A stretch of DNA of 61,305 bases, the filler included, from Platydemus manokwari (taxonomy: Eukaryota): NCBI GenBank assembly GCA_037951405.1. It is 5 parts of 5 records of this genome, joined end to end, with 100 filler letters (N's around TTAATTAATTAA, not from the genome) between each part and the next. Parts side by side here need not be neighbours in the genome. Positions count along the whole stretch, not along the records: positions 38,576 to 47,739 come from JBBMOY011289651.1; 4 more parts are not named here. One strand, given 5' to 3'. Every line of letters starts with the position of its first letter. Positions within the stretch are counted from its first letter, which is position 1. The position numbers and the translations under genes are program-made. This document shows, one piece after another, positions 46,653-47,078 of this stretch. Below the pieces are notes generated by a model that was given only the letters and a program-made list of their open reading frames with translations, made no database searches and was not told where the DNA came from.

Positions 46653-47078
46653 CATTTTATATTCCCAGTATTGGTTACCAATGTTCAATCATTTGGACGA
46701 ATCATTAATAACCCTGATCGGTGTGATGGCATTGTTATAGATGACATGAGTTTCAAGCATTGGTAAACAACTCAGTTAATACATCTTACTGATTTATTTC
46801 AAGAATGCTGCATTAATATCAAGTACAGTACTGCTTACATACCGAGATTCATGCCTCGTATAATATGCACAAACGATTGGGACGCAATATTACCTAACCT
46901 TATACCCGAGCATTACAAGGCCGTATCCAGACGATGCGTAATACATAATTTTATTGGACCTCTTTTCAAGGCTACTACAGCCACAATACTGGGAAACCCA
47001 TACTTCAAGAAGGCTACAATTGGGCCTCAGTTAGCAGTATCCAATCAAGAAGACGAGCCGTCTGTAGTCGACCAATAA
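46653..47078 (+). mobile_element. rep: Endogenous CRESS-DNA-virus Rep, SF3 helicase domain fragment (5'-truncated, one in-frame stop)
   Basis: One frame reads HFIFPVLVTNVQSFGRIINNPDRCDGIVIDDMSFKHW*TTQLIHLTDLFQECCINIKYSTAYIPRFMPRIICTNDWDAIL..YKAVSRRC. This gives Walker B (IVIDD), motif B' (IKYSTAYIP), motif C (IICTN) and an Arg finger (AVSRR). Walker A and the HUH domain are absent; TAA at 46764. Confidence 0.85.

What the first reader, a model, noticed from the sequence alone, without database searches (positions are those of the whole stretch)
46653..47078. Endogenous CRESS-DNA virus Rep helicase in an animal (likely flatworm) contig
Seen: the full downstream SF3 motif set of a circular ssDNA virus Rep (HFxxPxLV..DGIVIDDMSFKHW..IHLTD..INIKYSTAYIP..RIICTN..AVSRR). 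It is intronless, GC-richer than its flanks, has only one stop, and is cut just after where Walker A should be, adjoining about 8 kb of host-type repeat DNA. Established: this motif style is typical of CRESS Reps, many with no known host, and a Rep-encoding extrachromosomal virus-like element (PEVE) has been reported from a planarian. Inference: a fairly recent integration that could assign a host to an orphan CRESS lineage, or a Rep-based mobile element.
Basis: partly seen in the sequence, partly recalled or inferred. Interest (0 to 1): 0.75.

Follow-up and report, generated by a model that had tools for sequence, protein, structure and literature searches.

The report
Broken CRESS-virus Rep helicase relic
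A 426-base remnant of the helicase half of a small circular ssDNA-virus replication gene sits inside AT-rich non-coding DNA. This is a well-known kind of viral fossil, and here its nearest named relatives include the Rep of a planarian virus-like element.

Summary
Window 46653-47078 (+) is one reading frame of 141 codons with one in-frame stop and no frameshift.

- **Homology:** searched as two separate pieces, it matches the SF3-helicase half of 16 unnamed Rep proteins from short public contigs (best E 3.9e-11 against 1.84 billion proteins).
- **Family of the relatives:** they carry Gemini_AL1, Gemini_AL1_M or Viral_Rep domains. Their profile finds solved Rep nuclease domains and the porcine circovirus 2 Rep.
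- **Start of the fragment:** homology starts about five residues after the relatives' Walker A.
- **Missing parts:** no nuclease domain, Walker A, origin stem-loop or capsid was found in the 9.2 kb piece.
- **Conservation:** 21 of 22 strongly conserved family columns in the fragment keep the family's residue. GC is 0.387, against 0.278 upstream.

Best reading: a truncated, dead but little-decayed endogenous CRESS Rep fragment. The host could not be identified. A modelled close relative is structurally nearest to faeces-associated CRESS Reps and to the Rep of the planarian PEVE type 2 element, which gives the flatworm idea indirect support. This is a new member of a known kind, of moderate interest.

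The parts
46653..47078 (+). Broken 3' fragment of a CRESS-type Rep gene. It covers the SF3 helicase from just after the Walker A position to the gene's own stop codon. Breaks: 1 in-frame stop, 0 frameshifts, and 1 truncation at the 5' side that removes the nuclease domain and Walker A.
   Evidence: Homology to Rep proteins. A local profile of 15 relatives matches only here, at profile positions 197-306 of 392. Conserved columns are kept.
46120..46652 (.). GC-raised stretch (about 0.31-0.37) directly upstream of the Rep fragment. Origin unknown. It could be further decayed viral DNA or host DNA. It holds no Rep N-terminal half.
   Evidence: Composition. No profile match. No Pfam family for its open segments.
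47079..47620 (.). GC-raised stretch downstream of the Rep stop, with long open segments on both strands. The longest has 166 codons (46949-47446, +) and a Cys/His-rich pattern. Whether it belongs to the element is unknown.
   Evidence: No homologue or family found.
38576..46119 (.). AT-rich flank (GC about 0.28) with no tRNA or Rfam match and no open segment above 112 codons. Presumed host DNA.

Best explanation
The stretch is a dead endogenous viral element: the 3' part of the replication-initiator (Rep) gene of a circular ssDNA (CRESS-type) virus or virus-like element, embedded in AT-rich, probably eukaryotic, non-coding DNA.

In a complete Rep, an N-terminal HUH nuclease nicks the origin and a C-terminal SF3 helicase (Walker A, Walker B, motif C, arginine finger) unwinds the DNA. 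Here only the part after Walker A survives, and it carries one in-frame stop. It can therefore neither bind ATP nor nick DNA, and it does nothing enzymatic.

Shown: the homology, its bounds, the missing parts and the good conservation.

Inferred:
- A piece of viral DNA was captured in the chromosome, either already truncated or truncated later.
- This happened fairly recently, because the conserved residues and a GC content above the flank are still there.
- The source lineage is an unnamed branch of CRESS Reps whose nearest named relatives are faeces-associated CRESS viruses and the Rep of the planarian PEVE element.
For: - The downstream piece finds Rep-like proteins at E down to 3.9e-11 in 1.84 billion proteins.
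- The hits carry Gemini_AL1 (5.9e-25), Gemini_AL1_M and Viral_Rep.
- Both pieces align collinearly in one frame, starting 5-6 residues after the relatives' Walker A.
- A profile of 15 relatives matches only these two pieces in all six frames of the 9.2 kb (E 1.5e-27 and 8.8e-12; next best E 1.3).
- The same profile finds solved Rep nuclease domains (6h8o, 2hwt, 7vg8, 1l2m) and the PCV2 Rep 7lar.
- The model of relative P0003 is closest to the PCV2 Rep helicase, then to other SF3 helicases. In the viral library it is closest to CRESS Reps, including PEVE type 2 Rep.
- 21 of 22 conserved columns are kept.
- One stop is seen against 8.8 expected; GC is 0.387 against 0.278.
- The gene is cut internally and carries a stop, and AT-rich DNA (GC about 0.19) resumes after about 47620. 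This fits an insertion better than a contaminating free virus.
Against: - No reads were available, so neither junction is verified.
- The host is not identified.
- Only about 120 bases of AT-rich DNA lie beyond the GC-raised block on the right, before the piece ends.
- The stretches next to the fragment cannot be assigned to virus or host.
- Pfam, PHROGs and PDB sequence searches with the fragment's own pieces are blank. The assignment therefore rests on unnamed relatives and on their domains.
- The link to PEVE runs through a relative's model, not through the fragment itself.
Confidence: 0.7

Rival explanations
1. Assembly chimera or contamination: reads of a free CRESS virus in the sample were joined to host DNA, so nothing is integrated.
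For: The relatives all come from short contigs of 1-4.3 kb, as free small genomes would. The fragment is well conserved. It lies near the end of the piece.
Against: - A free virus would give an unbroken Rep with its nuclease half and Walker A. Here these are absent from all six frames, and the frame carries a stop.
- No origin-like stem-loop was found.
- AT-rich DNA lies on both sides.
Confidence: 0.1
2. Part of a multi-copy, Rep-carrying integrated element or transposon. Examples are the planarian PIVE repeats and the geminivirus-like Rep transposon of truffle. On this reading it is one decayed copy of a repeat family rather than a one-off viral capture.
For: - Such elements are described (PMC3198968).
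- PEVE type 2 Rep is among the nearest named structures to relative P0003.
- A GC-raised block of about 1.5 kb with other open segments surrounds the fragment.
Against: - Only one copy is visible in the piece.
- There are no convincing terminal repeats. The 34-nt inverted repeat that abuts the fragment is 74% complementary in AT-rich DNA, and no Rep 5' part lies beyond its other arm.
- No transposase or second helicase family was found.
Confidence: 0.15
3. A domesticated or expressed host gene, or exon, derived from a viral Rep helicase.
For: Conserved residues are kept far better than the AT-rich surroundings would suggest. A 75-codon ORF with its own ATG remains inside the fragment.
Against: - There is an in-frame stop.
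- Walker A is missing, so no ATPase is possible.
- No upstream exon matching Rep lies within 8 kb.
- No protein of this kind is on record for the ORF.
Confidence: 0.05

Closest known systems
Endogenous CRESS/circular-ssDNA-virus Rep elements in eukaryotic genomes (Liu et al. 2011, PMC3198968; Kinsella et al. 2020, PMC7493932)
   Same: Rep-derived sequence with stops and truncation inside host DNA. It can be used to tie orphan viruses to a host.
   Different: Here only the post-Walker-A helicase part is present, the host is not identified, and no named relative came back in the sequence searches.
Rep of the planarian extrachromosomal virus-like element PEVE (type 2) and its integrated relatives PIVE in Schmidtea mediterranea
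   Same: PEVE type 2 Rep is the 4th best match of the viral structure library to the model of relative P0003 (E 5.1e-19, 29% identity). Planarian genomes are AT-rich (my own knowledge), as is this flank.
   Different: The likeness is shown for a relative 46-61% identical to the fragment, not for the fragment itself. No second helicase, as reported for PEVE and PIVE, was found here.
Porcine circovirus 2 Rep (7lar, 8xms), the solved CRESS Rep helicase
   Same: Best solved structural match of relative P0003 (E 1.4e-6; TM about 0.6 on the ATPase domain). It has the same Walker A/B, motif C and arginine finger layout.
   Different: Identity is only 22-26%. The relatives' N-terminal domains lean to Gemini_AL1 rather than the circovirus type.
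Geminivirus-like Rep transposon of Tuber melanosporum (PMC3198968)
   Same: A Rep-like gene carried in a chromosomal repeat.
   Different: No terminal inverted repeats, transposase or extra copies are seen here.

Membership tests
CRESS-type Rep (HUH nuclease + SF3 helicase) | Significant sequence homology to Rep proteins | tested here: met
   E down to 3.9e-11 in 1.84 billion proteins. The hits carry Gemini_AL1, Gemini_AL1_M or Viral_Rep. The profile of the hits finds solved Reps.
CRESS-type Rep (HUH nuclease + SF3 helicase) | Walker B, motif C and arginine finger of the SF3 helicase | tested here: met
   All invariant family columns after Walker A are kept; 21 of 22 columns conserved in >=13/15 relatives are kept.
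CRESS-type Rep (HUH nuclease + SF3 helicase) | Walker A (P-loop) | tested here: not met
   Homology begins after it. There is no P-loop pattern in any frame of the piece.
CRESS-type Rep (HUH nuclease + SF3 helicase) | N-terminal HUH nuclease domain | tested here: not met
   No match to profile positions 1-196 in the six-frame segments of the 9.2 kb. The domain is present in relatives.
CRESS-type Rep (HUH nuclease + SF3 helicase) | SF3 helicase fold | tested here: inconclusive
   The model of the fragment's longer piece alone gave no fold match. The model of relative P0003 matches the PCV2 Rep, SV40 LTag, B19V NS1, E1 and AAV Rep40.
CRESS virus genome | Origin stem-loop with a conserved nonanucleotide | tested here: not met
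   Six nonanucleotide-like sites were found, none with a flanking stem of 5 bp or more.
CRESS virus genome | Capsid gene next to Rep | tested here: inconclusive
   No family or homologue was found for the neighbouring open segments. CRESS capsids are often too divergent to detect.
Endogenous viral element | Viral sequence flanked by host DNA on both sides, with read support | not testable with these tools
   AT-rich DNA lies on both sides.
Endogenous viral element | Inactivating damage | tested here: met
   One in-frame stop, one 5' truncation, no frameshift.
PEVE/PIVE of planarians | Direct homology of the fragment to PEVE Rep, and a second (E1/NS1-like) helicase nearby | not tested
There is only an indirect link through P0003. 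No second helicase was found in the scanned segments.
Helitron Rep/Hel | SF1 (Pif1-like) helicase | tested here: not met
   The relatives are SF3 helicases.

The most novel reading that the evidence does not exclude
The contig is from a flatworm, and the fragment is a recent integration of a PEVE-like CRESS lineage. That lineage is otherwise known only from unnamed sequencing-run contigs and from bird and mammal faeces. The integration would tie those orphan viruses to flatworm hosts. The surrounding 1.5 kb GC-raised block would hold further, still unknown genes of the element, such as the Cys/His-rich open frame downstream.
Probability: 0.2. Interest if true: 0.6.

Novelty: new member of a known kind. 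Interest (0 to 1): 0.38.

Why it matters
Rep relics in host chromosomes are one of the few ways to give a host to the thousands of CRESS viruses known only from metagenomes (PMC7493932). This one belongs to a branch with no named sequence relative. Its nearest named structural neighbours are faeces-associated viruses and a planarian element. If the contig's organism is confirmed, that branch gets a probable host group. In itself the fragment is non-functional, and this kind of finding is well known.

Tried and rejected
- **Family and structure searches with the fragment:** Pfam and PHROGs on the two pieces found nothing. PDB sequence search with the longer piece found nothing. The word-based protein search with the longer piece found nothing, as expected from its length limits.
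- **Fold of the longer piece alone:** the model was partial and the fold matches were meaningless.
- **Missing 5' half:** I looked for it in other frames, on the other strand and further upstream. It is absent.
- **Insertion idea:** a roughly 5.9 kb insertion bounded by the inverted repeat 40708-40741 / 46617-46650 might have split the gene. I rejected this because complementarity is 74% in AT-rich DNA and no Rep part lies left of it.
- **Intron idea:** the fragment might be the second exon of a spliced Rep. No first exon lies within 8 kb.
- **Other genetic codes:** open segments lengthen trivially under codes that read TAA/TAG as sense. No gene-like ORFs appear.
- **Origin, tRNA and RNA families:** no origin stem-loop, no tRNA, no Rfam match.
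- **Downstream and upstream open segments:** tested against Pfam, PDB, the protein word search and the Rep relatives, with no match.
- **Look-up of the window's own ORFs to name the source record:** not on record.
- **Word search with the relatives' alignment for named kin:** only unnamed proteins came back.
- **PEVE paper (PMC116598):** not held.

Full report
**Observation.** The piece is window 38576-47739. On the + strand, 46653-47078 is one reading frame of 141 sense codons with one in-frame stop and a terminal stop. Shuffles of the same bases give a mean of 8.8 stops, and only 0.065% of them have one or fewer. GC is 0.387 in the fragment and 0.278 in the 8.1 kb upstream. A finer profile shows a GC-raised block of about 1.5 kb (roughly 46120-47620). 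AT-rich DNA lies on both sides of it.

**What it is.** I searched the two stop-free pieces apart and never joined them.
- Pfam, PHROGs, the PDB sequence search and the word-based protein search were blank.
- The full HMMER search of 1.84 billion representatives with the longer piece gave 17 hits at E <= 1e-3, the best at 3.9e-11.
- One hit (P0015) is a low-complexity false positive.
- The other hits are 96-489 residues long and match in their C-terminal half.
- Several hits carry Rep domains: Gemini_AL1 (5.9e-25 in P0006), Gemini_AL1_M and Viral_Rep.
- All come from unnamed contigs of 1-4.3 kb in sequencing-run or metagenome assemblies.
- The shorter piece aligns to the same proteins, directly before the longer piece's match. 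It starts 5-6 residues after their GxxGxGKT Walker A.
- tblastn of the hits on the piece places the start of homology at 46653, in one frame.

**Missing parts.** A local profile of 15 relatives matches only these two pieces among 507 six-frame segments. The E-values are 1.5e-27 and 8.8e-12, covering profile positions 197-306 of 392, and the next best E is 1.3. No P-loop pattern exists in any frame. The nuclease half and Walker A are therefore absent from the whole piece, not merely shifted.

**Family of the relatives.** The alignment of 15 relatives (A1) finds the following in the PDB: Rep nuclease domains (6h8o, 2hwt, 7vg8, 1l2m) and the PCV2 Rep 7lar.
- An AlphaFold model of relative P0003 has pLDDT above 90 over its helicase domain.
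- Its best solved matches are the PCV2 Rep (7lar, 8xms), then SV40 large T, B19V NS1, papillomavirus E1 and AAV Rep40. All of these are SF3 helicases.
- Against predicted viral structures, the best matches are Reps of unclassified CRESS viruses from birds and pandas. [quoted passage not shown]
- A word search with the alignment found only further unnamed proteins, some with Gemini_AL1.
- The fragment is at most about 55% identical to any relative over its longer piece.

**State of the fragment.** In the alignment, every column invariant in the family after Walker A is kept in the window. Of the 22 columns conserved in at least 13 of 15 relatives, 21 are kept.
- Damage count: one in-frame stop, no frameshift, and one 5' truncation.
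- Matches to three relatives run almost to the terminal stop, so the gene's own 3' end seems to be kept.
- Without Walker A and the nuclease domain, the product could neither hydrolyse ATP nor nick DNA. The fragment is a relic.
- Good conservation and a GC content above the flank suggest a fairly recent capture. This is an inference.

**Surroundings.**
- No origin-like stem-loop, tRNA or Rfam family was found.
- The upstream 8 kb is AT-rich, with few and weak repeats. It has no open segment above 112 codons. That fits non-coding eukaryotic DNA but names no organism.
- The window's own ORFs are not on record in the public gene index.
- I do not take the contig for human: GC is about 0.28.
- The open segments beside the fragment have no detectable relatives. 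They include a 166-codon + strand segment with a Cys/His-rich pattern. I cannot say whether they are viral.

**Comparison with what is known.** Rep-derived endogenous elements are widespread in eukaryotes (PMC3198968). They have been used to assign hosts to CRESS viruses (PMC7493932). CRESS-derived sequence in a parasitic flatworm genome has been suggested (PMC10269781). Planarians have the extrachromosomal PEVE and, in Schmidtea, integrated relatives called PIVE (PMC3198968). The present fragment is a new member of this known kind. The flatworm reading gains indirect support but is not shown.

Noticed in passing
window 46949-47446 (+): A 166-codon open segment in another frame starts inside the end of the Rep fragment. 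The 122 codons beyond Rep have no stop, against 8.7 expected (P about 5e-5). It holds a C-x2-C-x8-C-x2-C-x4-H-x2-C-x10-C-x2-C pattern and has no ATG before that pattern. No Pfam, PDB or protein-search relative was found.
   Followed up: partly
window 47100-47620, both strands: Several overlapping open segments of 65-134 codons lie on both strands in a GC-raised stretch, so openness alone is weak evidence of coding here.
   Followed up: partly
window 40776-41400: A GC island (0.39) in the AT-rich flank has open segments of 112, 103 and 102 codons in three frames. None matches a Pfam family.
   Followed up: partly
window 41404-41589: Two adjacent direct repeats of about 91 nt, 78% identical.
   Followed up: no
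window 40708-40741 and 46617-46650: An imperfect 34-nt inverted repeat (74% complementary) whose right arm ends just before the start of Rep homology. It is probably chance in AT-rich DNA, and no Rep 5' part lies beyond the left arm.
   Followed up: yes
protein P0003 (relative): Its Walker A lies at residue 121, and its first 110 residues are modelled as low-confidence helices, not as a nuclease fold. The called protein may lack its true N-terminus.
   Followed up: no
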